64,000 nucleotides of DNA from Gracilinanus agilis. Taxonomy: Eukaryota. Below the pieces are notes generated by a model. The model did not search any database, was not told the origin of the DNA, and saw only the letters and a list, made by a program, of their open reading frames with translations. Made by a program: the position numbers and the translations under genes. The stretch's first letter is position 1. Every line of letters starts with the position of its first letter. Location: positions 321,912,732 through 321,976,731 of the forward strand of contig NC_058131.1 in NCBI RefSeq assembly GCF_016433145.1. Reading direction: 5' to 3'. Of this stretch, positions 763 to 62,964 are shown piece after piece.

Positions 763-965
763 NNNNNNNNNNNNNNNNNNNNNNNNNNNNNNNNNNNNNN
801 NNNNNNNNNNNNNNNNNNNNNNNNNNNNNNNNNNNNNNNNNNNNNNNNNNNNNNNNNNNNNNNNNNNNNNNNNNNNNNNNNNNNNNNNNNNNNNNNNNNN
901 NNNNNNNNNNNNNNNNNNNNNNNNNNNNNNNNNNNNNNNNNNNNNNNNNNNNNNNNNNNNNNNNN
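763..965. other. Assembly gap (203 N)
   Basis: Run of N. Confidence 1.
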
Positions 966-3889: not shown

Positions 3890-4108
3890 GGGGGGCAGCT
3901 GGGTAGCTCAGTGGATTGAGAGCCAGGCCTAGAGATGGGAGGTCCTAGGTTCAAATCCGGCCTCAGACACTTCCCAGCTGTGTGACCCTGGACAAGTCAC
4001 TTGACCCCCATTGCCTACCCTTACCACTCTTCCACCTAGAAGTCAATACACAGAAGTTAAAGGTTTAAAAAAAACAAAACAAAACAAAACAAAAAAAAAA
4101 AAAAAAGA
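3890..4108 (+). mobile_element. Young opossum-type CORE-SINE (SINE1_Mdo-like) with 9-bp TSD
   Basis: A/B-box head gggggcagctgggtagctcagtgg..ggttcaaatcc; (AAAAC)n/poly-A tail; TSD agaagaagc at 3881-3889 and 4109-4117. Confidence 0.93.
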
Positions 4109-5385
4109 AGAAGAAGCCAATTGGTAAAAGAAGCACAAAAATTGAATGAAAAGAAGAACTTTTTAAAAAGCAGAATTGATCAAATGGAAAAAGATATACA
4201 AAAATGCTCTGAAGAGAAGAACTTCTTGAAAGACAGAATTGGCCCTTTGGAAAAAGAAGTACAAAAATTCACTGAGGAAAAGAATTCTTTACAAAATAGA
4301 ATTGGCTAAATGGAAATGGAGGTTCAAAAACTCACTCAAGAAAATCATGCTTTAAAAATGAGAATTGAGCAAGTGGAAGCTAATGACTCTATGCAATGTC
4401 AAGAAACAGTCAAAAGAATGGCTGAAATATTTGTCACAGAGGTGGGGAGGTAATATGTGAACCTCATTCTCATCAAAAATAGCTCAATGAAGGAAGAAAA
4501 GTAATTTAAATTCTCTATAATCATGCAAAAATGCTCTAAATCACTATTAATTAGAGAAATGCAAATTAAAGCAACTTTGAGGTACCACCTCACACCTATC
4601 AGATTGGTCATTATGACAGAAAAAGAAAATGACAAAACTTGGAAGGGATGTGGGAAAATTGAGATGCTAATGCAATGTTGGGGGAACTATGAAATGATTC
4701 AATCCTTCTGGAGAGCAATTTGGACCTATGGCCAAAGGACTATAAAAGAGTATAAACCCTTTGACCTAGCAATACTTTCACTAGGTTTGTATCCCAAAAA
4801 GATAAAAAATACAAAAAGGAGAAGGACTCATATCCACAAAAATATTTCAAGCAGCATTTTTGGAGGGGCAAATAATTGGAAAGTGAGGGATACCTATCCC
4901 TTGGAGAATGACTAAGTTATAGTATTTGATTGTAATAGAATAATATTGTAGTGTAAGAAATGACAAGCAGGAGGAGCTCAGAAAAACCTGGAAAGACTTA
5001 AATGAACTGAAGCAGAGTGAAACAAACAGAACCAGGAGAACATTGTACAGCGTAACAGGAATATTGTACAATAAACAACTGTGAATAACTTAGCTACTCT
5101 TAACCATACAATGATCTAAAACTATCCCAAAAGACTCATGATGAAAAATGCCATCTGTTTCAAGAGAAAAATAACTGATAAAGGCTGAATCCAGACCAAT
5201 GAAAACTTTTTTCACTTTCTTAATTTTTTAATTCAAGTTTCCTTCTACGAAAGGATCAATATGGAAAAATGATTTACATGATTGTACATGTAATATCTAT
5301 ATAAGATTGCTTACTGCTTCAATGCGGGCAGGGGGATTGGAGGGAGAGAATTCGAGATTCAGTATTCTTTGAAAAATGTTGGAAA

Positions 5386-9180: not shown

Positions 9181-9361
9181 NNNNNNNNNNNNNNNNNNNN
9201 NNNNNNNNNNNNNNNNNNNNNNNNNNNNNNNNNNNNNNNNNNNNNNNNNNNNNNNNNNNNNNNNNNNNNNNNNNNNNNNNNNNNNNNNNNNNNNNNNNNN
9301 NNNNNNNNNNNNNNNNNNNNNNNNNNNNNNNNNNNNNNNNNNNNNNNNNNNNNNNNNNNNN
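9181..9361. other. Assembly gap (181 N)
   Basis: Run of N. Confidence 1.
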
Positions 9362-20910: not shown

Positions 20911-21429
20911 CACAGACAGGCATGGGCTAGAGCCTGTATGTGACCACCACACAGATATGTATGGGAAGGCATGCATTCTGTGTGGGCATAATATGGGCAC
21001 ACACCAGTGACTGGGTATAGCCGCTTGTGTGTGTGTGTGTGTGGGGGGTGCACAAACATTACAGCACCACATGTATATATTAATCCTCCAGCACGGAGCA
21101 GTGCAGTGGGAAAAGCTCAGGATTTGGAGTCAGAAAACAGAGTGGAAGCTTGCCTTTGCCCCTTACTACCTGTGTGACCTGGGACAAATTGTTTAAGCTC
21201 TCTGGAGCTCAGTTCCTTAGCTGTAGAATCTGCAGTTGGGCCACGTGGCTTCTGGGGTCCCTTCAGCTTCTAATCTATGATCCCAGCCTCTCCTTCTATC
21301 ACCCTATGCTTGAAAATGTGACTACACTGAATCTAGGAGTGGATGTATGTACATCGTGCTCATAACCCAAGTGTATAAGCCATTTGGGTTCATATGTGGA
21401 AATGGCCCCACATCTGTGGATATAGATAA

Positions 21430-21830
21430 TGGATGCAGAGAATATATATAGATATAGATAAATGGATGTAGATCTAGATGATAGATATAGATAAATAGAT
21501 CTAGATAATATATAGATATAGATAAGTGAGTGTAGATAATATATAGATAAGTGGATGTAGATAATATATAGAGACATAGGTAATATATAGATATAGATAA
21601 ATGGATGTAGATCTAGATGATAGATCTAGATAAATAGATATAGATAATATATAGATATAGATAAGTGGGTGTAGATAATATATAGATAAGTGGATGTAGA
21701 TAATATATAGAGATATAAGTAATATATAGACATAGATAAATGGATGTAGATCTAGATAATATATATCTATGTATAGATCTAGATAATAGATCTAGATAAT
21801 ATATAGATATAGATAAGTGGACATATCTAA
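21430..21830. repeat. AT-rich (ATAG-derived) compound tandem repeat with a 139-bp higher-order unit
   Basis: Anchor gatatagataaatggatgtag recurs at 21451, 21590 and 21729. Confidence 0.9.
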
Positions 21831-42720: not shown

Positions 42721-42979
42721 CCCTCCCTCCACAGCCCCCCCACTGCCAGGCTTCTCCAGGCCCCTGATTCCACACTGGCACCAGGGCCCAGGCCCTGTGG
42801 GTGAGGGGCAGTGGGAGCCGGCATTGCTAAGGGACCTGGAACTGGCCAACGTTTCCTCTTAGCTTTCAGGGTGGGTTGGCACCAGATGGTGGAGGAATAC
42901 CAGGATGAGCCTGGACCTAGCCTCCTCACAGCTTAGAGCTAGAAGGACCCTTACAATAGAAAATGTTCCATTCAATTCA

Positions 42980-43545
42980 ACAAGGAACTTTTGAATATAA
43001 CATGTTAGAATTTCATTTAACAAAGGGACCTTTGAACATGGAATGTTAGAGCCAGGAAGGAACCTACAACACAGAATGTCAGGGCTGGATGGGACCTTAG
43101 GACATAGACCAAGGGAGCTAGAAGGGTCTTTAGGACATAGAATATGGGAGTTGGAAGGGACCTTAGGACATAGAATATGGGAGCTAGAAGGGACCTTAGG
43201 ACACAGAATATTGGAGCTAGAAGGGACCTTAGGACATAGAATATTGGCATTGGAAGGGACCTTAGGACATAGACTATGAGAGCCAAAATGGACTTTAGGA
43301 CATAGGATATTGGAGCTAGAAGGGACCTTAGGGCATAGAATATTGGAGCTAGAAGGGACCTTAGGGCATAGAATTTTGGAGTTGGAAGGGACTTTAGGAC
43401 ATAAAATATTGGAGATAGAAGGGGCCTTAGGACATAGACTATGAGAGCCAAAATGGACTTTAGGACATAGGATATTGGAGCTAGAAGGAACCTTAGGACA
43501 TAGAATATTGGAGCTGAAAGGAGCCTTAGGATGTAGAATGTTGGG
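42980..43545. repeat. 33-bp minisatellite (ggagctagaagggaccttaggacatagaatatt) with a 165-bp higher-order repeat
   Basis: 11-aa periodic ORFs on both strands; variant unit gactatgagagccaaaatgg at 43272 and 43437. Confidence 0.95.
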
Positions 43546-43734
43546 AAGAAAATGATTCCCCCTCTCTGTCAATTTATGTGGGAGCAAACCGAGCCCTATT
43601 GAGGGGAAGCGACTCACCCAGAATCAATTGAAGAAATATTTATTTAACTCTGTTCCAGGCACTGTGCTAAGCACAGGAGATATAAGACATAAATGAAACT
43701 GTTCTTGCCCTAGGGATATTCTAATGGTATAGAC

Positions 43735-50850: not shown

Positions 50851-53286
50851 TATGAGCATTTATTAAGTTCTAAGTACCAATTCCTCTGCTAAATACTGAA
50901 GACACAAAGGAAAAACAAGAGTTCTTGCCCTCCAGGAAAGGGATTATTATCTTCAATTTACTAAGACTCTGGGCTTTCTAGGGTTACACAGCTCATGAGT
51001 GTCAGAATTTAACCCATATCTTCTGTCTTCAAGCCTCTATCTACTACAGTTCAATATACTGAGCAATTATTGATGATGAACTATACAAATGTGAGGCTTG
51101 GAAGGGTTAAATGATTTGTCTAGAGTAACAGGGCCAGGAAGTGACAGAGGCAGGATTGGAACTTAGGATTCAAAAACACATCTTCTAACTCCAGGTCCAT
51201 TCAGTACATTCTTAGGCCAATCCCTAGTCTTTGTATTAGGCAAAGTAGTAAGTCAAAAGTTCTCTGAATTTCTGAAGAGGAAAGCACCATGAATATACGT
51301 TTGCTCTTCCTCTCTCTCCCTTCTGTTCTTAGATAAGTAGTTATGACTGTGGTTAAGTATGGACATGGCCTTCCAGCTTTGTGCATTGCTCTCTGATCCC
51401 TTTCTACTCTTAGAATTCCTATGGAATTATAAATTTCCCTTTATCTGCAAAATCTTCTTTTGATCCTTCCATCATCTCTTTTCATGAACAGAAAACTGGG
51501 ATCTCTCATATATCTTTTGCCACCCTTTCCGTGGGAGGCATGGCTCCCTTTCCCAAGTCCCACTCACTAAGCCAGGAGACAGAGTCAGGAAATTCACTTC
51601 TCCCCACTTCCAAACCCATTCCTCTGTCACCATTTTCCAGTAACTTTTCCTCTTGAAATGTTCATGAAATCTAATACTGCCACCCTCATTCCCCATTCTT
51701 GTTAACATCTCTTTCAGGGGAATTATGGGATCCTGTCCTGAAGGTAAGAGAAATGGGAAATCTCTCAAGTTCTTAGGGTATGTGGGACATTGGGACAGAC
51801 TCCAGGGGATGGGCAAAGGCATATATCCTCAGAGTCATCCAGCAGAGGGAGGATAAGCCACAGGAGCTCCAGGACACTGCAACTCACAGCCGAGAGTGTC
51901 CAGGCTAGGGGAATATTATTGCATTGGAGTTGGGGTGGGAAGGACCCAGGATTAAGAGGTGGAAAGAATTAAACAGTTAAAAGACCTGAATCGAATCCCA
52001 ACTCTGGAACTTTTCAGCTGTGTAAGCTTGAGCAAACCACTTCCCTTTATCTGGCATCAGTTTCCTCATCTATAAAATATGGACAATGATATTGGCATTC
52101 CTTCCCCTAGGAAAGTGCTTTAAGAACTGGGGAGGGTTATAGACATGGGAAGTCTATATTGCATATCAATTGTATCCCTGGCTTGTGGCCAAAATGTGAC
52201 AAAATATCTGTCTACAGTATCATTCTTCTCCATCCCAACCCTAATTTCAGGTGTTCAGGGTCTTTCCAGTTTCCTTGCCATTCTTACTGGCTCTCTAAGT
52301 CATAATCAATTCATTCACAAAGAAGATATCAGGAAGTGATGGAGAGGTGCTTCTGAAGGGGTTTTCTAGTTGCATAAGGGACTAGTTCCATTGTCAATCC
52401 CAGGAAGCAAGAGATCTCAAGATAATAAGTGCTCACATTTATATAGCACTTTAAGGTTTACATAATGCTTGCTGTGGGTTCTCATTTGATCAGGGTGGAG
52501 GCCCAACTAGGGGTCACAAAAGGATAACTGGGATGTGACATTCCCAGGAGAATAGAACTTCATATTCCCATCCACTTCAGACATTTACCAAGCAACATGA
52601 GGCAGTGTAGTATAACATATAGTTGTGTGATGCAGGTAAGTCACATATTCTTCAGTTTTCTCTGTGAAACGAAGGGGTTAGATTTAATGGCCTCTAAGGT
52701 CCCTTCCAAGAGCTAAAGTTATGGCTTACTCACTGCCCCAATGTGGAAAACAAATAAATAGTTCCTGCTCTATGAGAACCCATTATTGTAAAAGGAGGAA
52801 GAAGGGAGTGCCGAGTATATACATAAATATAATACAAAGAAGAGTAAAATATAAGTAGAGCAGAGCTCTCAAAATACTCTAAGAAATTTAGAGATCTTTC
52901 AGCTGGGGAGAGAAAGAGGGAAGAGATATTCAAGGAAGGATCCACAAAGGAAGTAGCAGCTGAATTGAGCTTTGAAGGATGGGAAGGACTTCACTAGAGG
53001 AAAACAAAGGAGGGGGAGAAGAGCATTCCAAGCTTGAGAAGAAAGTGGGAGCAAAGGCCATAGGCTCATAGGATTGATTTAGTCCAATAGCCTCAATTTT
53101 ATAGATGAGGAAACTAATTGTCTAGAAAGGGGAATTAGCTCAAAGAAGGCTAGCAAAAGTTCTGGGTAGGGCCAGGGAATTGATGCATTCTTTCTTGGTT
53201 CCCTCCTTCCTTTCTTTCTTTCTCTCTCTCTCTCCTTTTCTTCCTTTCTTCCTTTCTTCCTTCCTTCCTTTCTTTCTTCCTTCCTT

Positions 53287-53634
53287 NNNNNNNNNNNNNN
53301 NNNNNNNNNNNNNNNNNNNNNNNNNNNNNNNNNNNNNNNNNNNNNNNNNNNNNNNNNNNNNNNNNNNNNNNNNNNNNNNNNNNNNNNNNNNNNNNNNNNN
53401 NNNNNNNNNNNNNNNNNNNNNNNNNNNNNNNNNNNNNNNNNNNNNNNNNNNNNNNNNNNNNNNNNNNNNNNNNNNNNNNNNNNNNNNNNNNNNNNNNNNN
53501 NNNNNNNNNNNNNNNNNNNNNNNNNNNNNNNNNNNNNNNNNNNNNNNNNNNNNNNNNNNNNNNNNNNNNNNNNNNNNNNNNNNNNNNNNNNNNNNNNNNN
53601 NNNNNNNNNNNNNNNNNNNNNNNNNNNNNNNNNN
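53287..53634. other. Assembly gap (348 N) inside a (CCTT)n microsatellite
   Basis: Run of N flanked by TTCC/CCTT repeats on both sides. Confidence 1.
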
Positions 53635-53648
53635 TGTATAAGAGACAG
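53635..53648 (+). other. Tn5/Nextera mosaic-end adapter remnant
   Basis: TGTATAAGAGACAG equals the 3' 14 nt of the mosaic end and sits right at the gap edge. Confidence 0.92.
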
Positions 53649-54465
53649 CCTTCCTTCCTTCCTTCCTTCCTTCCTTCCTTCCTTCCTTCCTTCCTTCCTT
53701 CCTTCTTCTCTTTCTTCCCTTACCTTCTGCCTTAGGATCAAAATAAAGTGTTGGTCCCAAGGCAGGAGAATGGTAAGGACTAGGTAATTGGGATTAAGTA
53801 CTAGGAGTTACATCTTATATCTAAATGCTCAGCTGGTTAAGGCTATGGTTAATCCATTTAAAAAAAACCAAACAAATAAAGCAACTAAGTAGTGAGCCAG
53901 TCCCCATTGTGGCGGAGACCTCAGCCTCCAAATAACACTAATAAAAACAGCTCACTTTTCTAGAGCACTTTGGGGTTTACAAAGCTTCATAATAAGCCTG
54001 TGAGGTAGGTAGTGCAAGGATTCTATTCCCATTTTACAGAGGAGGAAGCTGAGGCTCAGAGAGGTGAAATGAATTGCCCAGGTTCATGAAACTAATAACA
54101 TTTTAGAGGTGAAATTTAAATCCTGATTTTCTGACTGTTAGACTAGGCTCTTGCCATTCCATCATGATGTTGCGGAAGCAATAATCACAGGACCAAGAGC
54201 GGGAATGGATTTTAGAGATAATCTAGTCTAACTTCATCAGATCACAGATGATGATCCTGAAGCCAGGAGAACTTTAGTGACTTGTCTCACTTCACAGAAA
54301 TGGCTAATGAATAAAATGAGGATTTGAACCCAGGTCATCTGACTCCAAGTCCAGCGCTCTTAACACTACAGTAGACTACTGCTGCCCTATGCTCAAGTTT
54401 AGGTACACTGTAGCATCCAGAGGAAGGGAAAGAAAGGAAAGAGGGAAGCTGGGGTAGGGTGGAGG

Positions 54466-54757
54466 TTACGCGGGAATGTGGGCCACAATGGCTGGATCCT
54501 CCTCATCCTCATCAGAGAAGCTGATGTGTAGGATCGTGTCGTTGGCCCCAGATGGGAAGGTTGTGGGTGAGAGGTGCCACTGAGTGGCCCCAGCTTCAGC
54601 CTCCTCCAGGGTGTCACTGCTCACTGAGTCTGGGGATCCAAAGGATGATGGTTGTCCTGGGTCAGTCTCCGAGTCCAGACTGAGGGAAGTCTTGGTCAGC
54701 CTCTTCTTGAGGGTGGGGGGTGGAGGATGAAGCTTGGGAATGGACGGTGATAGCAAC
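54466..54757 (-). CDS. NOS1AP-like: Terminal coding exon (phase 2 start, TAA stop) with a [11 protein letters not shown] motif and an acidic tail
   Basis: Acceptor ctcctgtactgttcccag|G restores AGG (Arg), then 96 open codons [19 protein letters not shown]...[20 protein letters not shown]-stop. The 292-nt length fits the phase. Confidence 0.82.
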
Positions 54758-56346
54758 CTGGGAACAGTACAGGAGATTGGGAAGGGAGGAGAGTGAAAAG
54801 GATACAGGACCTGGAGTCAGGATTATTCCTGCATTCTTTATACTATCTCTCTGAACCTGGTTCCTCCTCTAAAAAAAGGGATAATCACATCAGAGTCCTT
54901 GTGAAGAAAGGGCTCACTTGGGGGAAGACATGTCTGGAGGCAGAGGGAAGATCTAAAGCTTTCCCAGTTGTCTTGTCTTTTCTATGAGCTGCCACAGAGC
55001 CAGGACATAGGACATCAGCTGTAGGAATTCACAGGAGGGCTCCTTTGTCATTGCTCCCATTTGTTTAACTCAAACCCAACAGAGCCAGGAGGCTCACTAT
55101 TGTGGGCTCTGCTTCCCTTTCTGAAGTGTAGGGGAGGACACAGGATTCAGGGCCATCTTAGAGAAGTACAAGAATGTTGTAAAAAGGGTACTAGCTCTGG
55201 AGTCAGAGGACTTTGGTTTGAATCCCAGTTCTGAAGAGGTTAGGCAAGTCACTTTCTCTCTTCAGAGCTTCCTTTCTACATTTAAAAAATGAGAGGAGTT
55301 AGGCTATACCTACTCTAAGGTTCTTTCCAGTTCTAAATCCTATGATCCTATTAATCCTAATAACCCTTTACAATTATTTGGTGCGTTGAAAGATCTCAGA
55401 AAAGTCTTTTCATATGTATTTCATTAGATCCTCAAAAATAAATCTGTGAAAAGGATAGTCTATATTTTATGGCCCACGATTTACAGAAAGGAAAACTGAG
55501 GCTTAGAGAGGGGAGTCATTTGCCCCAAATCATATAGTGCAGTGTTGGTGAAGTATTGGCATGCCTGCCAAGCTGGCCCTGGGGGAGCTGCTCTGTTCTC
55601 CCTCTTCCCAGTGCCTGAAGACATTTTTTGCATCCCCAGCCCCTCTGTCCAGCTACCCAAAGGCAGCACTTCCTCCCTCCACTCTCTGGGGTAATGTGTG
55701 GGGCTCACAGGCATCTTGAAGTTGCAGTTTGGGCACACAAACTTGAAAACCTTCACTAATGCTGATATAGGATTGAGTTAGGGCAGAACCAGGATAGGAA
55801 TTTAGATCTCCTGACTCCTAATTTATCACTCTTTGCACTATAATATACTGCCCCCAGGATCTAAAAAAGGTCCCACACCCCAGTGGGTGTGTGTATGTTT
55901 CTGGGACTGTGAGGAAGAAGTTACTTTGTAGCTTCAGAGGAGAGGGCAGGGAGGTGGTGGGGTCACTGACCTATCCTTATTGGTTGTGAGGCTGGAGGGA
56001 CTCCCTCCTTGGTCAGTCTCCTCGGATTCGTCTTCCCTCTGACTGAGTCCAGGAAGATGCCTACTTCTCAAAGTCAGGCTAACCTTTCCCACAGTGTCCT
56101 GGCTCCTTTGGACTCTGGGACCCAGGGCAGAGGCCCGATCCAAGCTAAGGCTAAAGCTCTGCAGAGACTGGCCACCTGTTTGGGAAGAAGGGAAAGAGAC
56201 AACCATGAACTCTTTGATAAGAGACTATTGCTAAAGATTCCTAGACAGGTCCCCAGAGATTGGCAGCAGCCATCTCCTGTACCTCCTCCCCAAGTTCCAA
56301 AACTCTTTGTTCTCAGATCCCTTCTAACTCTAATATTCTACATTTT

Positions 56347-56394
<48 letters not shown>

Positions 56395-59300
56395 CTAAAA
56401 TCCTATGTCATCAATAATGACAGGTCAGCATCTTTTTGTTCTAAGCCTCCTTCCATCTCTAATATTCTGTTATTTGTTCTTTAATTCCTCAACAAGGATG
56501 GGTCAGGGTCTCCATTGTTTTCCCTAGGACTCCCTCCAGGAGATAAAACTGTAGGGCCCCCTCCTTTTGAACCTGGAGAAGAGAACTCCAGCCAGATATT
56601 ATGAAACTGTGTATCCTTAGAGCCTTTCTACATCTCATTTTCTATATTCTATGAAAGGAACAAAATTAGAGTATCAGTATTAACCAGTTCAAAATCTCAG
56701 TGTAATTTAGTACTATATATAAAACTAAAGGTATTTCACAAGATGCACTATACCAGGAGCCTAGGATGTTTCTCTAGTTGTCCTTTACCTTTAATATCTT
56801 GGATCCTTTCATCATTAGATCAATATCATCTCCTCTTCCTGTCTTCACTTGGGCCACATGAAACTCTCAGCCTTCCCCATCCCCAAACCAGTAGGTCAGT
56901 GCCAGCCCCCTTCTCTTTTTGATCCACATCTTCTCACCACCAGATCCCTATCTTGTCCTGAACCCTCCTTACCATTAGGCCGGGCCCAAGCTCTTTCCTC
57001 TAGTTCTCTTAGCTGCCGCCCCAGCAGTGCCATGTGCTGGAGCAAGTCTCTGTTGGTCAGTAGCAACTGGCGGATCCTGGCCTGGGCCTCCACTCTGGCT
57101 GCTGTCTCTGCTGCAAGCTGGTCTGTGAGGAGCTGTACCTGGAGAATTCCCATTACCACACCATTTGTGGCAATTCTTGACCTCCAATCCTACCACCTAA
57201 TTCTCATTGTGAAGGAGTTACCAAATCAGGATTACCCAATCAGAAGCAACCGTAGGGGATATTTTGATCCAAACTGGCTCTGGCAACAAAACCCCTCTCC
57301 AACATTGCTAGCAACCTCTATTTAAGACATACAGTAATAAGAAGCTCACTGCTTCTCAGGTTGTCCCATTTATGAGCATCTCTTATTGTCAAGAAGGCTT
57401 CATATCAAACCAAAATCTGCCTCTTTGTAATTTGAACCCGTTACTTCTAGTTCTTCCCTCTCAGACAGGGTGGCATAGTGGACAATGTGCTGGTCTCGGA
57501 GTCAGGAAGACTTGAATTCAAATTTGACCTCAGACTCTTACTTACTGTTTGTACCTAAGCAAGTCACTTAGTTCCTGTTTTCTATAAATTAGATAAATGA
57601 GTAAAACACTTAGCACAAAATAGGTATTACAATGCTTATTTCTTCTTTTCCCTGAAGCCAAGCTTAATAAATCTAGTCCCTCTTCTATAAGATAGCTCTT
57701 CAAATTTTTGAAAACAGTTATCATGTGTCTTTCTCTGCACGAAGTCTTTTCTAGGCTAAACTTCCCTGTGAGGTTGTTTTAATAGACAAGTTTGTACTCC
57801 CCAAATTGGTGGTTTAGCCTTTCCTCTGCCCCCTAGAACAGCATTATAATATAAGCTCTGAGAAGATAGAGACCATGTTTTTAATAAAAATATGCTTCCC
57901 CCATACCTAGCATAGGACTTTCTGCATAGCAGATACATGATAAATATTTGTCTAATGAAAAAATGAGTGCTAGTAAATAAACCTCCTTTGAAAAAAACCT
58001 ACTCTATTTGTACAATAAGAAGGGAACAGATTGAGAAAAGAATATCTGTAGTAAATATGTCAGAGAAAGGCCTGGCTTCCAGAGCCTATAAATGCTTATT
58101 GAATGACTGATCTCAAAGAATGAATACACATCTCTAAAAGTAATATGCTCCCTAGTGCATATTATGTAATGATCAAAGAAGACAAACAGAAAACCTATGA
58201 AGGATGAGATAAAAAAGTTAATAACACATGAAAAAAATGTTTAATCAACAAATTAACCAATAAGCGTTTAGTAAACATTGGCTATGTGCCAGAGGTTATG
58301 CTAAATGCAGGAAATATAAGTAAAAAAAATTTTAAAAGTCTTTATTTACTCAAATGGGAGACAACAAAAAAGATAAATATAAAGTGGAGGGAAAGTAAAT
58401 TCAGAGGGTTAAGCAGTAGCAACTGGGAGAACCAGAAAAGGTCTCCTGGAAGGGATCTTATAGGAATGTAGGCATTCTATAAGGCAGAGATAAAGAGGGA
58501 GAGCATTCCAGGTAAGGCTGGATAGTAGTGCAAAGGTATAGGTAGAAGATGGAGTATGAGAGGACTGCTCTGGTTTCATTGTAGACTAAATGGAGAACAG
58601 CAGAATGTAGGAAGACATAAGGTTGACAGGGGTCAGATTATAAAGAGTTACTGAGCAGGAGTGGATGTAGTCAGACATATACTTTAAGCATTTGAAAAAA
58701 GGATGAAATGGAGAAGAGAGAGATTTGAGGCAGGATGCCACATAGGAGATTACTGTAATTGTCCAGGACAGAGGTGATGATGCCTGACCTATGGTGCTGA
58801 TTCTGTGAGTGGAAAGAAGAGAACATATATGAAAGATGTCACAGAGAAAGAAATTACAAGGTTTGGCAATAGATTAGATTTGTGGGATGAGAGAGAGGAG
58901 TCAAGAATGATGTCCAAGGTTGTGAATCTGGGTGAAAGGAAGGATGGTGATCCCTTCAACAACAGTAGTGAAGTTCAGATGAACGGTGATTTGGAGTAAG
59001 AGAGAATGGGGGAGGAGAGACAAATTTTGGACATTTTGAGCTTAAGATGCCTTCAGGAATTCTAGTTTGAGATGAGTTCAATGAGTAGTTGATGCTGTGA
59101 GGTTAATTCAGGAGAAAGACTGAGGCTGGACAGAAATCTAGGACTTATCTGATAGAGATTCTAACCGAATCCATAAATAAGAATACCAAGTTAGAAAGTG
59201 TAGAGATAAATAAAAGAGAAAGTGTAGAGATAAATAAAAGAGGGACTGAACTTTAGTGGGCATCCAAAGTTAGTGGCTGTGCCATGGATAAAAGTCCAGT

Positions 59301-62300
59301 AAAAGAGACTGAGAAGAAATAATTGGAAAGGTAGGAGAATCAAGAAAGAGCAGTGCCACAAAAACCCAGAAAGGAGATAAATCCAGGAAGAGAAGGTAGT
59401 CAACAGTGTTAGAAGATTCAGAAAGGCCAAAAAAGATGAGAATTGAGAAAAGACCATTAGACTTTTTAAATTAAGAGATCACTGGTAACTGTGAAAAGTT
59501 GAATTGAAGGAAGGCAGATTTGGGAGCATTTGGGAAATGGGAGGAAAATAGAAGTGATCTTTTTTAGCTCTCCTGGATTGTCACCTTTATGCAAATGACT
59601 CAGACATCTAAATATTCATACCCAGTTTCTCTCAAGTGAGTTTTTCAAAGGAAGTTTCCTAGCATTCATTTTTCATGAATATAAAACAAATATTTACTAT
59701 GTATCTATTATGTAAAGAGCATTGGGCCAGACGTTGGGGAAACGCAACATTTTAATTTGACTTGGTCTCTGCCCTCATAGTGCATCCAGGATAATAATAT
59801 TTTAAGAAAATAAGCTAAACTTTCAATCCAGGGAGCACAAAAATATCAAATTACAGAGGATATTGATCTGGCGGTCAATGGAAGACTTTGGTAGGGGAAG
59901 ACATATTAGAACTGTTTTCAAATATCTGAAGAACTGTCAAATTGAAGAACATGTAGACTTGTTCTGTTTAACTTGAGTAGAATGAATGAGGAGCCGTGGG
60001 TTCAAGTTACAGGCAAATTTTGGCTTGATATGAAGACTGACTTCCTGACAATCAGAGTTGTCCATAAGTGTACTTAATAAATGCTTTTTCATTAATCCAA
60101 CCAATTTTGTTATTTCTTTCAATTCTATTCAGTAGTTTACGAGTAGGAGGGAAAGAAGGGGAATAATTCAGGATTGAAATTTGATGAGGCATGACTGATG
60201 ATCAGACAAGGACATAAGGGATCCAAGCATAAAGAATAGTACAAAAATGAGTGGGTTTACCAACTGTGAAGGAAGGAGAGTTTGGCCAGAATTGGATGTT
60301 GGCTTGTAATAGTACCAAACAATGGGAACATCAGATGTCAAGGTAGGAATGAAGAGAAGGTTTAGGAGAAATAAGGCATATGAAGAGATGAAAAAATAAA
60401 ATATTATGCTCATATAAAAAAACACCTCAGAGTTCTTGAACACAAAGGAAGAATTCTTATTGGGATGGCAAGATCAAAGGTATGATCATCCGTGTGAGAA
60501 GGTGAGGTAGAATGAAGGAGTAAGTCATGGGAATCGAAGAAACTGGAGACTTGGGGATTCAGATGTTTGAGGGGATATCTGAGGAAAGAAGATGGAGTAG
60601 AAAGGAAGATTATGAGTCAGGAACTGAACCCAAATGAGAAAGAGAGAGGTTTACTTGGGGAAGGGATCTGTCATCAAGATTTGGACTAGGTGGTAAATTT
60701 GGATAGAGTGAACTTCTAAGAAGGTTAGGATGATGGTAAAGAGAGTAGACATTTTGAAGTCCATCTAATCCAAATACTTCATTTTATAAATGAGAAAACC
60801 AAGGTTTAGAGAGTTTAAGTGAGTTGGCCATAGTCATAAACCAGTAAGAATCATAAGTAAGACCTGAACCAAGGCCTTCCTAACTCCAACTCCAACACTT
60901 TATCAAGTATACTACACTGTTTCTCCAATTCATTCATAATCAGAGAAATACAAATCAAGAACAAACTTTTAAGATACCACTTTATATTCACTAAATTAGC
61001 CAAGACAAAAAATAAATACATTATCACAAGGGCTGCTGGGAAACAGGCATTGTAATACATTGTGATAGTTGAGAGCCTTTTGGAGAATAACTGGACAGTG
61101 TACAAAAAAGAGTCACAAAACTTATGAAAATCTCTGTCCCAGTGATACCGTCATTAAGATTCCCCTAAAAGGGGAAATCTTAATCCCCTAAAAGGCAAAA
61201 AAGGTAAACAGAACCTATCTGCTTCTTTTTTTCAAATAACAAGGAAACCACTTATGTGTCCCATGATTGAAGAATGGTTAAAATATGGTATACTGCTTTA
61301 ATAAAATATTACAGCATTGTAAAAGGATAACTATAAAGGGTATAAAGACAAAAAGAACTTATCTTTATTTGTAAAGGGATTTATGGTTTGCCAGCATTTT
61401 ATATACATCATTTCACCACAACTCTTTTAGGTAGATGATGTTCTTATTTTTTATTTATAAGTAAGAAAATCAAGGAAAATGGGGCTCCTCACACTAGTAA
61501 ATGGGAATTGACTGCAGTTTTCAATCAGAAGAATCAAAATTATAAATATATTGAGTACAATGATTTTTTTTTAGGAACTTCATATAATTATATTTTTTAG
61601 GAACTTCATATAATAATACGAAGGATGCAAAGCAAGTGCATTTTTGGACAATTTGTTTAGTTTTACTTTGTCAAATGCTGATTGTTTTATGAGAAGCATC
61701 ATGGCATAGTGGATAGAGAAGCTAACTCTGAAGCCAAGAAGACCAACTTCTGACATACATAACTGCTGTGTGATCCTGAGCAAATCACTTAACCTCTCAG
61801 GGCTCTAGGCCAGTGGTGTGAACTCAGATATAAATGAGAGACACCAAAATGTACATTTTGGTGAGGACCACCTATTGATTTGTAGAACCATAAAGTAACA
61901 CTATCTATGTTTTATTTATTTTTAAAATTTTGTCAAATATTTCCCAATTATATTTAATCTGATTTCTGATTCACTGGAAGTGTTGTGGGGCTAGCTAACG
62001 TGCCTGATACCTCTGCTAGGTATAGGGCAACTCTTTAGGACTATAAGTTGTAGAACAAGTGCCAACCTGCCTTGGTAAAGGAATTTCTCAGTGACAGTTC
62101 CCTATGCCAATGAACTTATGAGTCTGATCTCAATAAAATGGTTTTATGTAGCTGTGCTTTAAAAAATTTTATGTTTACCTTATATACATATATATTTGCT
62201 TCCATTGAGTTTATGATAAACTTTCATAAGTAAACATGAATATAAAACAAATATGTGAAAATATAAGTAAATATATAAAATTATATAATAATTGTTTTTA

Positions 62301-62964
62301 CAGAAAGAAAAATATAAGTTCTGTTTCAAGTGACTTAAAAAAAAGGAATGATATTGTTTGGTGTTCTCCAAGGCAACTGAGAGTATCTCATTTGAGCCTT
62401 ACAAAAGATCTACTAAAGTCACACATAAATAGTACACCCCTTTTACAGATGGTAAATATTCTATAACTCTTATTTTCCTGAGCCTCAGAGAAATAATCAT
62501 GATTTGTTCAAGGTCATGCACCTAGTAAATGAAGAAAGCCAAGATTTGAATCCAGTTCTCTTGCCTCCGTATTCAGTTGCTTCCTTGGGAAAGGAAGGGA
62601 TGGAACTATGGTGAGACCAAAAGAATCTAAGGAAATTAATGACTTTGGGAGTACAGATATAGAATGCTGACAGTGGAACACTGTAGCCACTCTGAAAGCC
62701 ACCCAGACAAACCCTGCCCTTGGGGAGCTCTCTTTAAGGAAAAAAAGTAGGAAAAATGATTACCTGGGCAGTGGCTACCTGAGCCTGCTGCCATTGCTGG
62801 AGAAGCTGGTGATGAAGGAGCCGGGTACAATGTGGAGTCAAGAGTGGTGTTACTGGCATGACTGATGACTTGGGGGAGGATTCCAGGCTTCTTGAGGGTG
62901 ACCATGGCTGGGCACTGGCAGGGTGGGCAGAGCCAGATCCAACATCCTGGGCACAGCGGCATAC
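54466..62964 (-). CDS. NOS1AP-like: 3' part (4 coding exons) of a NOS1AP/CAPON-family adaptor gene, probably a paralog; 5' PTB exons lie outside the window
   Basis: Spliced frame reads ...[17 protein letters not shown]|[47 protein letters not shown]..., matching the recalled NOS1AP coiled coil [59 protein letters not shown]. All three introns are GT-AG with compatible phases (0, 1, 2). TAA stop at 54468-54466. Confidence 0.9.
55971..56175 (-). CDS. NOS1AP-like: NOS1AP-like exon (205 nt, phase 1 to 2)
   Basis: Strong acceptor ctctttcccttcttcccaaacag|GT, donor GATAG|GTCAGT. The frame continues from the previous exon and contains [16 protein letters not shown] and DESEETD. Confidence 0.82.
56350..56393. 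repeat. (GT)n microsatellite in the NOS1AP-like intron
   Basis: Direct reading. Confidence 0.97.
56973..57138 (-). CDS. NOS1AP-like: NOS1AP-like coiled-coil exon (166 nt, phase 0 to 1)
   Basis: Acceptor ttctccag|GTACAG, donor AATG|GTAAGG. Encodes [55 protein letters not shown]; about 32/50 identical to human NOS1AP as recalled. Confidence 0.93.
58230..59560 (-). mobile_element. Long L2 fragment (intronic)
   Basis: Minus [30 protein letters not shown] and L2 3' motifs; includes a 24-bp tandem duplication at 59193-59242. Confidence 0.7.
59900..60070 (+). mobile_element. CR1/L3 3' fragment
   Basis: ttttcaaatatctgaagaactgtc..gacttgttctgttt..ttcctgacaatcagagttgtcc. Confidence 0.65.
61811..62015. 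mobile_element. Second copy of the 43735 MITE family, nested in a CORE-SINE (61695-62130)
   Basis: Ends CAGTGGTGTGAAC / TGATACCTCTG; shared internal tatctatgtt..aatatt(t/c)cccaatta. Confidence 0.75.
62764..62964 (-). CDS. NOS1AP-like: NOS1AP-like exon: Ser/Pro-rich linker plus Gln-rich start of the coiled coil
   Basis: Donor GCCCAG|GTAATC at 62763 (phase 0). In-frame acceptor is either ccaag|GTA (62964) or cccag|GAT (62946). Encodes [29 protein letters not shown], similar to recalled [29 protein letters not shown]. Confidence 0.85.

What the first reader, a model, noticed from the sequence alone, without database searches (positions are those of the whole stretch)
54466..62964. Diverged NOS1AP/CAPON paralog in a marsupial, possibly absent from humans
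Seen: four phase-consistent exons encoding a CAPON-type Gln-rich coiled coil. Recalled: this segment is very strongly conserved in NOS1AP orthologs, yet only about 32/50 residues match here, and everything downstream is far more diverged. I know of no second full-length NOS1AP gene in human. Inference: this is an old duplicate (possibly an ohnolog) retained in marsupials and perhaps lost in eutherians, giving marsupials a second PTB/coiled-coil adaptor of this family.
Basis: partly seen in the sequence, partly recalled or inferred. Interest (0 to 1): 0.75.

Follow-up and report, generated by a model that had tools for sequence, protein, structure and literature searches.

The report
Marsupial NOS1AP-like paralog, 3' exons
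The four exons are real and form the 3' end of "NOS1AP-like", an old second copy of the NOS1AP adaptor gene that databases already annotate in sharks, fish, frogs, reptiles, birds, monotremes and marsupials, and for which I found no placental-mammal protein.

Summary
On the minus strand, exons at 62964-62764, 57138-56973, 56175-55971 and 54757-54466 have canonical, phase-consistent splice sites. Exon by exon they are 92-99% identical to the RefSeq Monodelphis "NOS1AP-like" protein.

A maximum-likelihood tree splits gnathostome sequences into NOS1AP proper and a NOS1AP-like clade, each supported 100/99. Monodelphis and a caecilian have a member in both clades. The marsupial NOS1AP proper lies on a different chromosome-sized record. 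A mammal-specific profile search listed marsupials and monotremes, then sauropsids, amphibians, lungfish and sturgeon, but no eutherian.

The gene is under purifying selection (dN/dS 0.11 against Tasmanian devil), although the marsupial stem branch is very long. In birds it sits head-to-head with TTLL11.

The protein has a PTB domain, a coiled coil and a C1orf226-like tail, and it lacks the EIAV ligand for the nNOS PDZ domain. It therefore resembles the NOS1AP-C1orf226 "intergenic" isoform.

The gene is not marsupial-specific and is not new to databases. I found no paper on it. No RNA-seq evidence could be obtained. An earlier scan note on this same stretch (s1-153920) had already read the tail as a NOS1AP/C1orf226 fusion.

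The parts
62764..62964 (-). Exon A: Ser/Pro-rich linker followed by the Gln-rich run (...[19 protein letters not shown]). An alternative donor 15 nt upstream would end the exon at 62779, dropping VATAQ as in one Sarcophilus isoform.
   Evidence: Splice sites were read. The exon is 98.5% identical to Monodelphis NOS1AP-like (P0175) over 67 aa. The Sarcophilus isoform P0001 lacks VATAQ.
56973..57138 (-). Exon B: the conserved coiled coil ([51 protein letters not shown]...). The [11 protein letters not shown] signature marks the tetrapod paralog clade.
   Evidence: Splice sites were read. A phmmer search of 1.84 billion representatives gave a best hit at 96% (Sarcophilus NOS1AP-like), other paralog-clade members at 70-80%, and NOS1AP proper at about 60-68%.
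55971..56175 (-). Exon C: the counterpart of the 5' part of the last NOS1AP exon, ending at an internal-type donor (GATAG|GTCAGT). If that donor is not used, the frame stops 13 codons later, with the stop codon ending at 55934 (...[12 protein letters not shown]).
   Evidence: Sequence read. The exon is 92% identical to Monodelphis and 85% to Sarcophilus. In NOS1AP proper, the first 153 nt of exon 10 are spliced to the C1orf226 exons (PMC12660744).
54466..54757 (-). Exon D: the C1orf226/DUF4628-like tail, carrying the [14 protein letters not shown] motif and the acidic [12 protein letters not shown] motif. Stop TAA at 54468-54466.
   Evidence: Sequence read. The exon is 99% identical to Monodelphis. 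It gives a weak Pfam DUF4628 hit, E 0.16. Gar and shark members of the same clade pass the Pfam cut-off. Profile-profile comparison of the tails gives probability 93%.
52620..54465 (-). Probable 3' UTR (inferred). It contains the N run at 53287-53634, which I did not try to fill.
   Evidence: The window is colinear with the Sarcophilus locus L003, whose annotated gene ends at L003 38250, corresponding to about 52620 in the window. No RNA evidence was obtained.

Best explanation
The stretch holds the last four coding exons of the marsupial ortholog of 'NOS1AP-like'. The species is an opossum-like one, very close to but probably not Monodelphis domestica. The PTB domain exons lie beyond the window's end.

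NOS1AP-like is an ancient vertebrate paralog of NOS1AP/CAPON. It arose before jawed vertebrates diverged, is kept from sharks to birds, monotremes and marsupials, and is apparently lost in eutherians.

The encoded protein has an N-terminal PTB domain (seen in the orthologs), a Gln-rich coiled coil, and a diverged C1orf226/DUF4628-like tail. It has no EIAV C-terminus.

Inferred function: a constitutive counterpart of the NOS1AP-C1orf226 'intergenic' (NOS1APc-type) isoform. It would be a PTB and coiled-coil scaffold acting independently of the nNOS PDZ domain, not an nNOS ligand.

In marsupials the protein evolved very fast on the stem lineage and lost about 100 residues of the tail, but it has been under purifying selection since.
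For: Exon structure and identity to annotated marsupial models come.

Careful ML tree: the NOS1AP proper clade and the NOS1AP-like clade are each supported 100/99. Monodelphis and Rhinatrema have a member in both. Marsupials plus monotremes form a group (88/91) inside the amniote part of the paralog clade. The quick tree with more rows agrees.

There is a separate true NOS1AP in marsupials. Monodelphis XP_056671430 and relatives lie on a 544.7 Mb record, while the paralog lies on a 760.8 Mb record. The same holds in Sminthopsis.

No eutherian appeared among the 120 best hits of the Sarcophilus protein. None appeared with a marsupial+monotreme profile, where scores drop from 890 bits or more (marsupials, monotremes) to 734 bits (birds, turtles) and run down to 624 bits (lungfish, sturgeon).

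dN/dS is 0.11 over 285 codons against Sarcophilus, with dS 0.46 in line with about 70% identity in flanking non-coding DNA.

Of 158 sequences carrying the tetrapod paralog signature, none ends in EIAV, and 118 carry the LHISFS motif near the end. Of 169 NOS1AP-proper sequences, 38 end in EIAV and 95 in DLLSFE.

DUF4628 passes Pfam's cut-off in the gar and elasmobranch paralogs, and hhalign on the tails gives 93%. The PTB domain is intact in the marsupial proteins.
Against: The PTB exons are outside the window, so the full domain architecture is shown only in the orthologs.

A decayed or unannotated eutherian copy would not be seen.

Synteny (TTLL11) was seen only in two birds. Nothing lay within 10 kb of the Sarcophilus gene.

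The function is entirely inferred by analogy with the NOS1AP isoforms.

The marsupial stem branch is very long (1.48 substitutions per site against 0.06 for marsupial NOS1AP proper). That could mean relaxed constraint or a change of function.
Confidence: 0.88

Rival explanations
1. The locus is the marsupial NOS1AP ortholog itself, merely fast-evolving.
For: It shares the family's coiled-coil motif and the exon-10-to-C1orf226-like splicing layout.
Against: The tree places it in the other clade with 100/99 support. Monodelphis, Sminthopsis, Dromiciops, Petaurus and Notamacropus have a separate NOS1AP that is 80-83% identical to bird NOS1AP, and in Monodelphis and Sminthopsis it lies on a different chromosome-sized record.
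Confidence: 0.01
2. It is a decaying duplicate or pseudogene whose open frame is a leftover.
For: The marsupial stem branch is very long, and the tail is shortened by about 100 residues relative to monotremes and sauropsids. No RNA evidence was obtained here.
Against: dN/dS is 0.11 across roughly the opossum to Tasmanian-devil divergence, with four intact exons, canonical splice sites and conserved phases. Full-length models with an intact PTB domain exist in Monodelphis, Sarcophilus and Macrotis, and related models in Sminthopsis and Antechinus.
Confidence: 0.03
3. A eutherian ortholog exists but is unannotated, fragmentary or too diverged, so the paralog is not truly lost in placental mammals.
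For: The protein searches list only 120 rows and only proteins of 0.55-1.75 times the query length. No eutherian genome DNA could be searched here. The marsupial copy shows how fast this gene can diverge.
Against: The mammal profile search shows a clean gap with no eutherian above 624 bits, while lungfish and sturgeon are listed. Every paralog-type (LLLTNRD) hit to the coiled-coil exon among 1.84 billion representatives matches a marsupial, sauropsid or amphibian sequence type. Eutherian proteins that NCBI names 'NOS1AP-like' (Sciurus) fall in NOS1AP proper.
Confidence: 0.08

Closest known systems
NOS1AP / CAPON, canonical isoform (about 500 aa, PTB ... EIAV)
   Same: It belongs to the same family. 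The orthologs carry an N-terminal PTB domain (Pfam PID). It has a Gln-rich run followed by the LLxDQLAAExxARxEAQAR...LLQH coiled coil, 32/47 identical in exon B.
   Different: It falls in a different gnathostome clade. It has no EIAV PDZ ligand: 0 of 158 paralog sequences against 38 of 169 NOS1AP proper. The region after the coiled coil is barely alignable. EIAV is described as a vertebrate NOS1AP innovation (PMC3276551).
NOS1AP-C1orf226 intergenic splice product (NOS1APc-type isoform; PMC12660744, PMC11607453)
   Same: The architecture is the same: PTB, coiled coil, the 5' part of the last NOS1AP exon ending at an internal donor, then a DUF4628/C1orf226-type tail with a PPPP-basic motif and an acidic ...SF(S)E end.
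   Different: In this gene, this is the C-terminal arrangement of 118 of the 158 tetrapod paralog-clade sequences held, and no model with a PDZ ligand was seen. In the marsupial the tail is encoded by one short exon and is far diverged: exon D alone gives DUF4628 E 0.16. It is encoded at a different locus.
RefSeq 'carboxyl-terminal PDZ ligand of neuronal nitric oxide synthase protein-like' of Monodelphis, Sarcophilus, Macrotis, Sminthopsis, Antechinus, platypus, echidna, birds, reptiles and amphibians
   Same: It is the same gene. The window's exons are 92-99% identical to the Monodelphis model and 85-96% to Sarcophilus, with the same exon order and similar intron sizes.
   Different: The window's species differs from the Monodelphis model at 8 of 284 compared residues, so it is probably another didelphid. 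Only the 3' part of the gene is in the window.

Membership tests
NOS1AP/CAPON protein family | N-terminal PTB/PID domain | not testable with these tools
   The PTB exons lie upstream of exon A, beyond coordinate 64000. The orthologous marsupial proteins P0152 and P0175 carry Pfam PID (E 1.9e-29 and 1.2e-21).
NOS1AP/CAPON protein family | Gln-rich run followed by the conserved coiled coil ([11 protein letters not shown].EAQAR...LL.N.D.LQH) | tested here: met
   Exons A and B carry it. phmmer found 232 family hits at E 0.001 or better, and every hit whose name was looked up is a NOS1AP-family protein. Exon B is 32/47 identical to NOS1AP proper.
NOS1AP/CAPON protein family | C-terminal EIAV ligand of the nNOS PDZ domain (the feature that gives CAPON its name) | tested here: not met
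   The window's protein ends ...AIVAHIPA, and the unspliced read-through of exon C ends ...CPLL. None of 158 paralog-clade sequences ends in EIAV.
NOS1AP proper (ortholog of human NOS1AP) | Falls in the NOS1AP-proper clade of a gene tree, with no closer NOS1AP in the same genome | tested here: not met
   The Monodelphis proxy falls in the other clade (100/99). Monodelphis has a separate NOS1AP on another record.
NOS1AP-like paralog clade | Groups with sequences annotated NOS1AP-like from monotremes, sauropsids, amphibians and fishes, and carries the [11 protein letters not shown] signature and the LHISFS(D/E) tail motif | tested here: met
   Shown. The tree used the annotated Monodelphis protein as a stand-in, because the window's exons were not joined.
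DUF4628 / C1orf226 family (Pfam PF15429) | Significant match to the Pfam profile | tested here: inconclusive
   Exon D alone gives E 0.16 and 12 bits against a cut-off of 26. Full marsupial, monotreme, turtle, bird and frog paralogs give no hit. The gar (31.9 bits) and elasmobranch (28.0 bits) paralogs pass. hhalign of paralog tails against NOS1APc tails gives probability 93%, E 3e-7, over the C-terminal 37 columns only.
Ohnolog pair from the vertebrate whole-genome duplications | The duplication predates the gnathostome radiation, and the two copies lie in paralogous chromosome blocks | tested here: inconclusive
   A shark or ray sequence lies inside the paralog clade, and the lamprey sequence groups only weakly (91/80) with the paralog clade on a very long branch. 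In two birds the paralog is head-to-head with TTLL11. That human TTLL11 lies at 9q33, in a block paralogous to 1q23 where NOS1AP lies, is from my own knowledge and was not tested. Marsupial synteny was not obtained.

The most novel reading that the evidence does not exclude
Both ancient copies share the PTB, coiled-coil and DUF4628-tail layout, so that fused layout is the ancestral vertebrate NOS1AP gene. On this reading the human 'gene' C1orf226 is the detached 3' end of NOS1AP, and the EIAV nNOS-binding end is a later add-on in one copy only. The second copy would have been lost on the eutherian stem, after a burst of change in the lineage leading to marsupials. Non-eutherian vertebrates would then have a dedicated, nNOS-independent NOS1APc-type adaptor that placental mammals must supply by alternative splicing of a single gene.
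Probability: 0.55. Interest if true: 0.45.

Novelty: already known. Interest (0 to 1): 0.3.

Why it matters
The gene is ordinary in the sense that public annotation already has it, in more than a hundred species. Three things about it have modest value.

- It shows that 'NOS1AP-like' is a true old paralog that placental mammals appear to lack. NOS1AP biology worked out in mouse and human may therefore be split between two genes in opossum, chicken, frog and fish models.
- Its fixed C1orf226-like tail supports the view that the recently described disease-relevant NOS1AP-C1orf226 transcript (PMC12660744) reflects the ancestral gene structure rather than a splicing oddity.
- Its database name ('PDZ ligand of nNOS') is probably a misnomer, because the ligand motif is absent.

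Tried and rejected
- Marsupial synteny: the Sarcophilus loci show no neighbour within 10 kb. The Macrotis locus came without DNA. The Monodelphis, platypus and gar proteins were not on record for the contig look-up. The Fundulus locus showed no neighbour. tblastn of bird TTLL11 first-exon ORFs against the 10 kb upstream of the Sarcophilus gene found nothing.
- Downstream neighbour in the window: motif scans for NDUFA8-type CHCH exons and a listing of long open frames in 1-54000 showed nothing that looked coding.
- Earlier scan notes: they held nothing for TTLL11, NDUFA8, DAB2IP, LHX6, MORN5, PTGS1 or OLFML2A.
- Pfam on single exons gave only sub-threshold hits.
- Rfam found nothing in the window.
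- Literature: searches for nos1apa/b, NOS1AP-like, NOS1APL, NOS1AP2 and 'capon-like' found no paper on this paralog.
- The annotated Monodelphis protein stood in for it.
- Human sequence: none was used, and the N runs were left as they are.
Full report
**What is in the sequence**

Reading the minus strand gives four exons with canonical splice sites and consistent phases.

| Exon | Coordinates | Acceptor | Donor or stop | Phase at 3' end |
|---|---|---|---|---|
| A | 62964-62764 | ccaag\|GTATGC | CAG\|GTAATC | 0 |
| B | 57138-56973 | ctccag\|GTACAG | AATG\|GTAAGG | 1 |
| C | 56175-55971 | aaacag\|GT | GATAG\|GTCAGT | 2 |
| D | 54757-54466 | ttcccag\|G | TAA at 54468-54466 | - |

- A second possible donor 15 nt upstream in exon A would drop VATAQ, as one Sarcophilus isoform does.
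- Exon A ends in the Gln-rich run and exon B is the coiled coil.
- Exon C is a Ser-rich and acidic stretch.
- Exon D carries an [14 protein letters not shown] motif and an acidic [12 protein letters not shown] end.

**Is it real**

- Each exon was searched on its own, by reference.
- phmmer with exon B against 1.84 billion representative proteins gave 232 hits at E 0.001 or better. The best was 96% identical, in a 512-aa protein that NCBI names 'carboxyl-terminal PDZ ligand of neuronal nitric oxide synthase protein-like' of Sarcophilus. Members from Sminthopsis and Antechinus sit in the same cluster.
- Exon by exon, the window is 98.5%, 98%, 92% and 99% identical to the RefSeq Monodelphis domestica NOS1AP-like protein. 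It is 85-96% identical to Sarcophilus and Macrotis.
- There are 8 differences in 284 compared residues against Monodelphis. The window is therefore probably another didelphid, not M. domestica itself.
- The locus is colinear with the Sarcophilus locus over 20 kb. Non-coding DNA is about 70% identical, and the four exons come in the same order with similar introns.
- Summing Nei-Gojobori counts over the four exons against Sarcophilus gives dS 0.46, dN 0.052 and dN/dS 0.11.
- This is a conserved coding gene, not a chance frame and not a pseudogene.

**Paralog or ortholog**

- Exon B is 32/47 identical to NOS1AP proper of marsupials (Dromiciops, Notamacropus) and of a eutherian (Camelus). It is 38-42 of 47-53 identical to NOS1AP-like of platypus, turtle, guineafowl and Xenopus.
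- A search with a bird NOS1AP returned true NOS1AP proteins of Petaurus, Dromiciops and Notamacropus.
- The Dromiciops cluster also holds Monodelphis, Vombatus and Sminthopsis proteins.
- In Monodelphis the true NOS1AP lies on a 544.7 Mb record and the paralog on a 760.8 Mb record. In Sminthopsis the figures are 478.7 Mb and 684.6 Mb.
- A careful maximum-likelihood tree of 34 proteins, rooted on amphioxus, splits jawed-vertebrate sequences into two clades, each supported 100/99.
- The first clade is NOS1AP proper: bichir, teleosts, caecilian, turtle, birds, marsupials and eutherians.
- The second clade is NOS1AP-like: an elasmobranch, sturgeon, gar, teleosts, lungfish, frog, caecilian, lizards, crocodilian, turtle, birds, monotremes and marsupials.
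- Monodelphis and the caecilian Rhinatrema each have one protein in each clade.
- A quick tree with 55 rows agrees.
- The duplication is therefore older than the split of cartilaginous and bony vertebrates. The lamprey sequence groups only weakly with the paralog clade (91/80), on a very long branch.

**Absence from eutherians**

- The 120 best hits of the Sarcophilus protein are marsupials, then turtles, birds, crocodilians, squamates, monotremes, amphibians and gar. None is a eutherian.
- The marsupial protein is fast-evolving, so I repeated the search with a profile of two monotreme and two marsupial sequences. That profile should favour any mammalian relative.
- In the profile search, marsupials and monotremes score 890-1080 bits. 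There is then a gap to 734 bits for birds and turtles, and the list runs down to 624 bits with lungfish and sturgeon. Again no eutherian is listed.
- Eutherian proteins that NCBI calls 'NOS1AP-like' (Sciurus) carry DUF4628 and fall in NOS1AP proper.
- Every paralog-type (LLLTNRD) hit to exon B among the representatives matches a marsupial, sauropsid or amphibian sequence type.
- This is good but indirect evidence of loss. Eutherian genomes themselves could not be searched here, and no human sequence was used.

**Synteny**

- In guineafowl and in a tit the paralog lies head-to-head with TTLL11, about 7 kb away.
- From my own knowledge, human TTLL11 lies at 9q33. That block shares many paralog pairs with 1q23-q31, where NOS1AP lies (for example OLFML2A/OLFML2B, LMX1B/LMX1A, PBX3/PBX1, PTGS1/PTGS2). 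This fits an ohnolog origin, but I did not test it.
- For marsupials I obtained no neighbour.
- The 54 kb downstream of the gene in the window shows no evident gene.

**Anatomy and likely mechanism**

- The marsupial orthologs have an intact PTB domain.
- Past the coiled coil, the paralog tails align across tetrapods around three islands: RRVEGSE, IPKLNPPPP..(K/R)KR..K and NDTCLHISFSEDE.
- The marsupial tail lacks about 100 residues that monotremes and sauropsids keep.
- Exon D on its own touches Pfam DUF4628, the C1orf226 family, only weakly (E 0.16).
- The gar and elasmobranch paralogs pass Pfam's cut-off (31.9 and 28.0 bits against 26).
- A profile-profile comparison of paralog tails with NOS1AP-C1orf226 tails gives 93% probability over the C-terminal motif.
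[quoted passage not shown] This gives an isoform that lacks the PDZ-binding end and predominates in kidney (PMC12660744). It binds KANK1 (PMC11607453).
- The window's exon C to exon D junction has the same layout.
- Of 158 sequences with the tetrapod paralog signature, none ends in EIAV and 118 have the LHISFS motif near the end. Of 169 NOS1AP-proper sequences, 38 end in EIAV and 95 in DLLSFE.
- EIAV has been described as a vertebrate NOS1AP innovation (PMC3276551).
- My inference is that the paralog is a constitutive NOS1APc-type scaffold, with PTB-mediated and coiled-coil-mediated interactions and no binding to the nNOS PDZ domain through its C-terminus. The steps shown are the architecture and the absence of the motif. 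The interaction partners are inferred.

**Rate**

- The marsupial stem branch of the paralog is 1.48 substitutions per site. The monotreme stem is 0.72, and the marsupial stem of NOS1AP proper is 0.06.
- Present-day constraint is nevertheless strong (dN/dS 0.11).
- There was a burst of change, adaptive or relaxed, on the lineage leading to marsupials.

**Novelty**

- The gene is annotated in RefSeq in well over a hundred species, so it is already known to databases.
- I found no paper about it under several names.
- The earlier scan note s1-153920 on this same stretch, which read the tail as a NOS1AP-last-exon-like segment fused to a C1orf226-like exon, agrees with what I found.

**Limits**

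It was also covered by whole-window tandem-repeat and Rfam scans.
- The N runs (763-965, 9181-9361, 53287-53634) were left alone.

Noticed in passing
window 43023-43544 (open frames 42862-43623, minus strand): A minisatellite of about 16 copies of a 33-bp unit, 79% matches. It keeps long open frames in several phases (repeating ...ILCPKVPSSSN...). It looks like a tandem repeat rather than a gene.
   Followed up: partly
window 21419-21821: A complex AT-rich array built on (ATAGAT)n, with higher-order periods of 25-139 bp.
   Followed up: no
window 4061-4912: An open frame resembling a LINE-1 ORF2 fragment (…LLIREMQIKATLRYHLTPIRL…), preceded by a 63-bp tandem repeat that encodes a coiled-coil-like stretch. 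It is probably a decayed retrotransposon.
   Followed up: no
window 763-965, 9181-9361, 53287-53634: Three runs of N. The first and third are flanked by CT/TC and CCTT/TTCTTCCT simple repeats. The third lies inside the probable 3' UTR of the gene.
   Followed up: no
L001 1-2984 and L004 1-2953 (bird loci): In guineafowl and a tit, TTLL11 lies head-to-head about 7 kb from the start of NOS1AP-like, which suggests a shared bidirectional promoter region.
   Followed up: partly
proteins P0031, P0037, P0166 (teleost paralog isoforms): Some teleost isoforms of the paralog end in a short hydrophobic run (…CE(D/E)P(P)LLL(I/F)L.L.) instead of the DUF4628-like tail. This may be an alternative membrane-associated C-terminus. 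The marsupial read-through of exon C ends …PPPPCPLL.
   Followed up: no
protein P0374 (Haemorhous): One bird RefSeq model fuses the kinase UHMK1 (Kist) with NOS1AP proper. It is probably a read-through or mis-joined annotation of neighbouring genes, and it incidentally shows UHMK1-NOS1AP linkage in birds.
   Followed up: no
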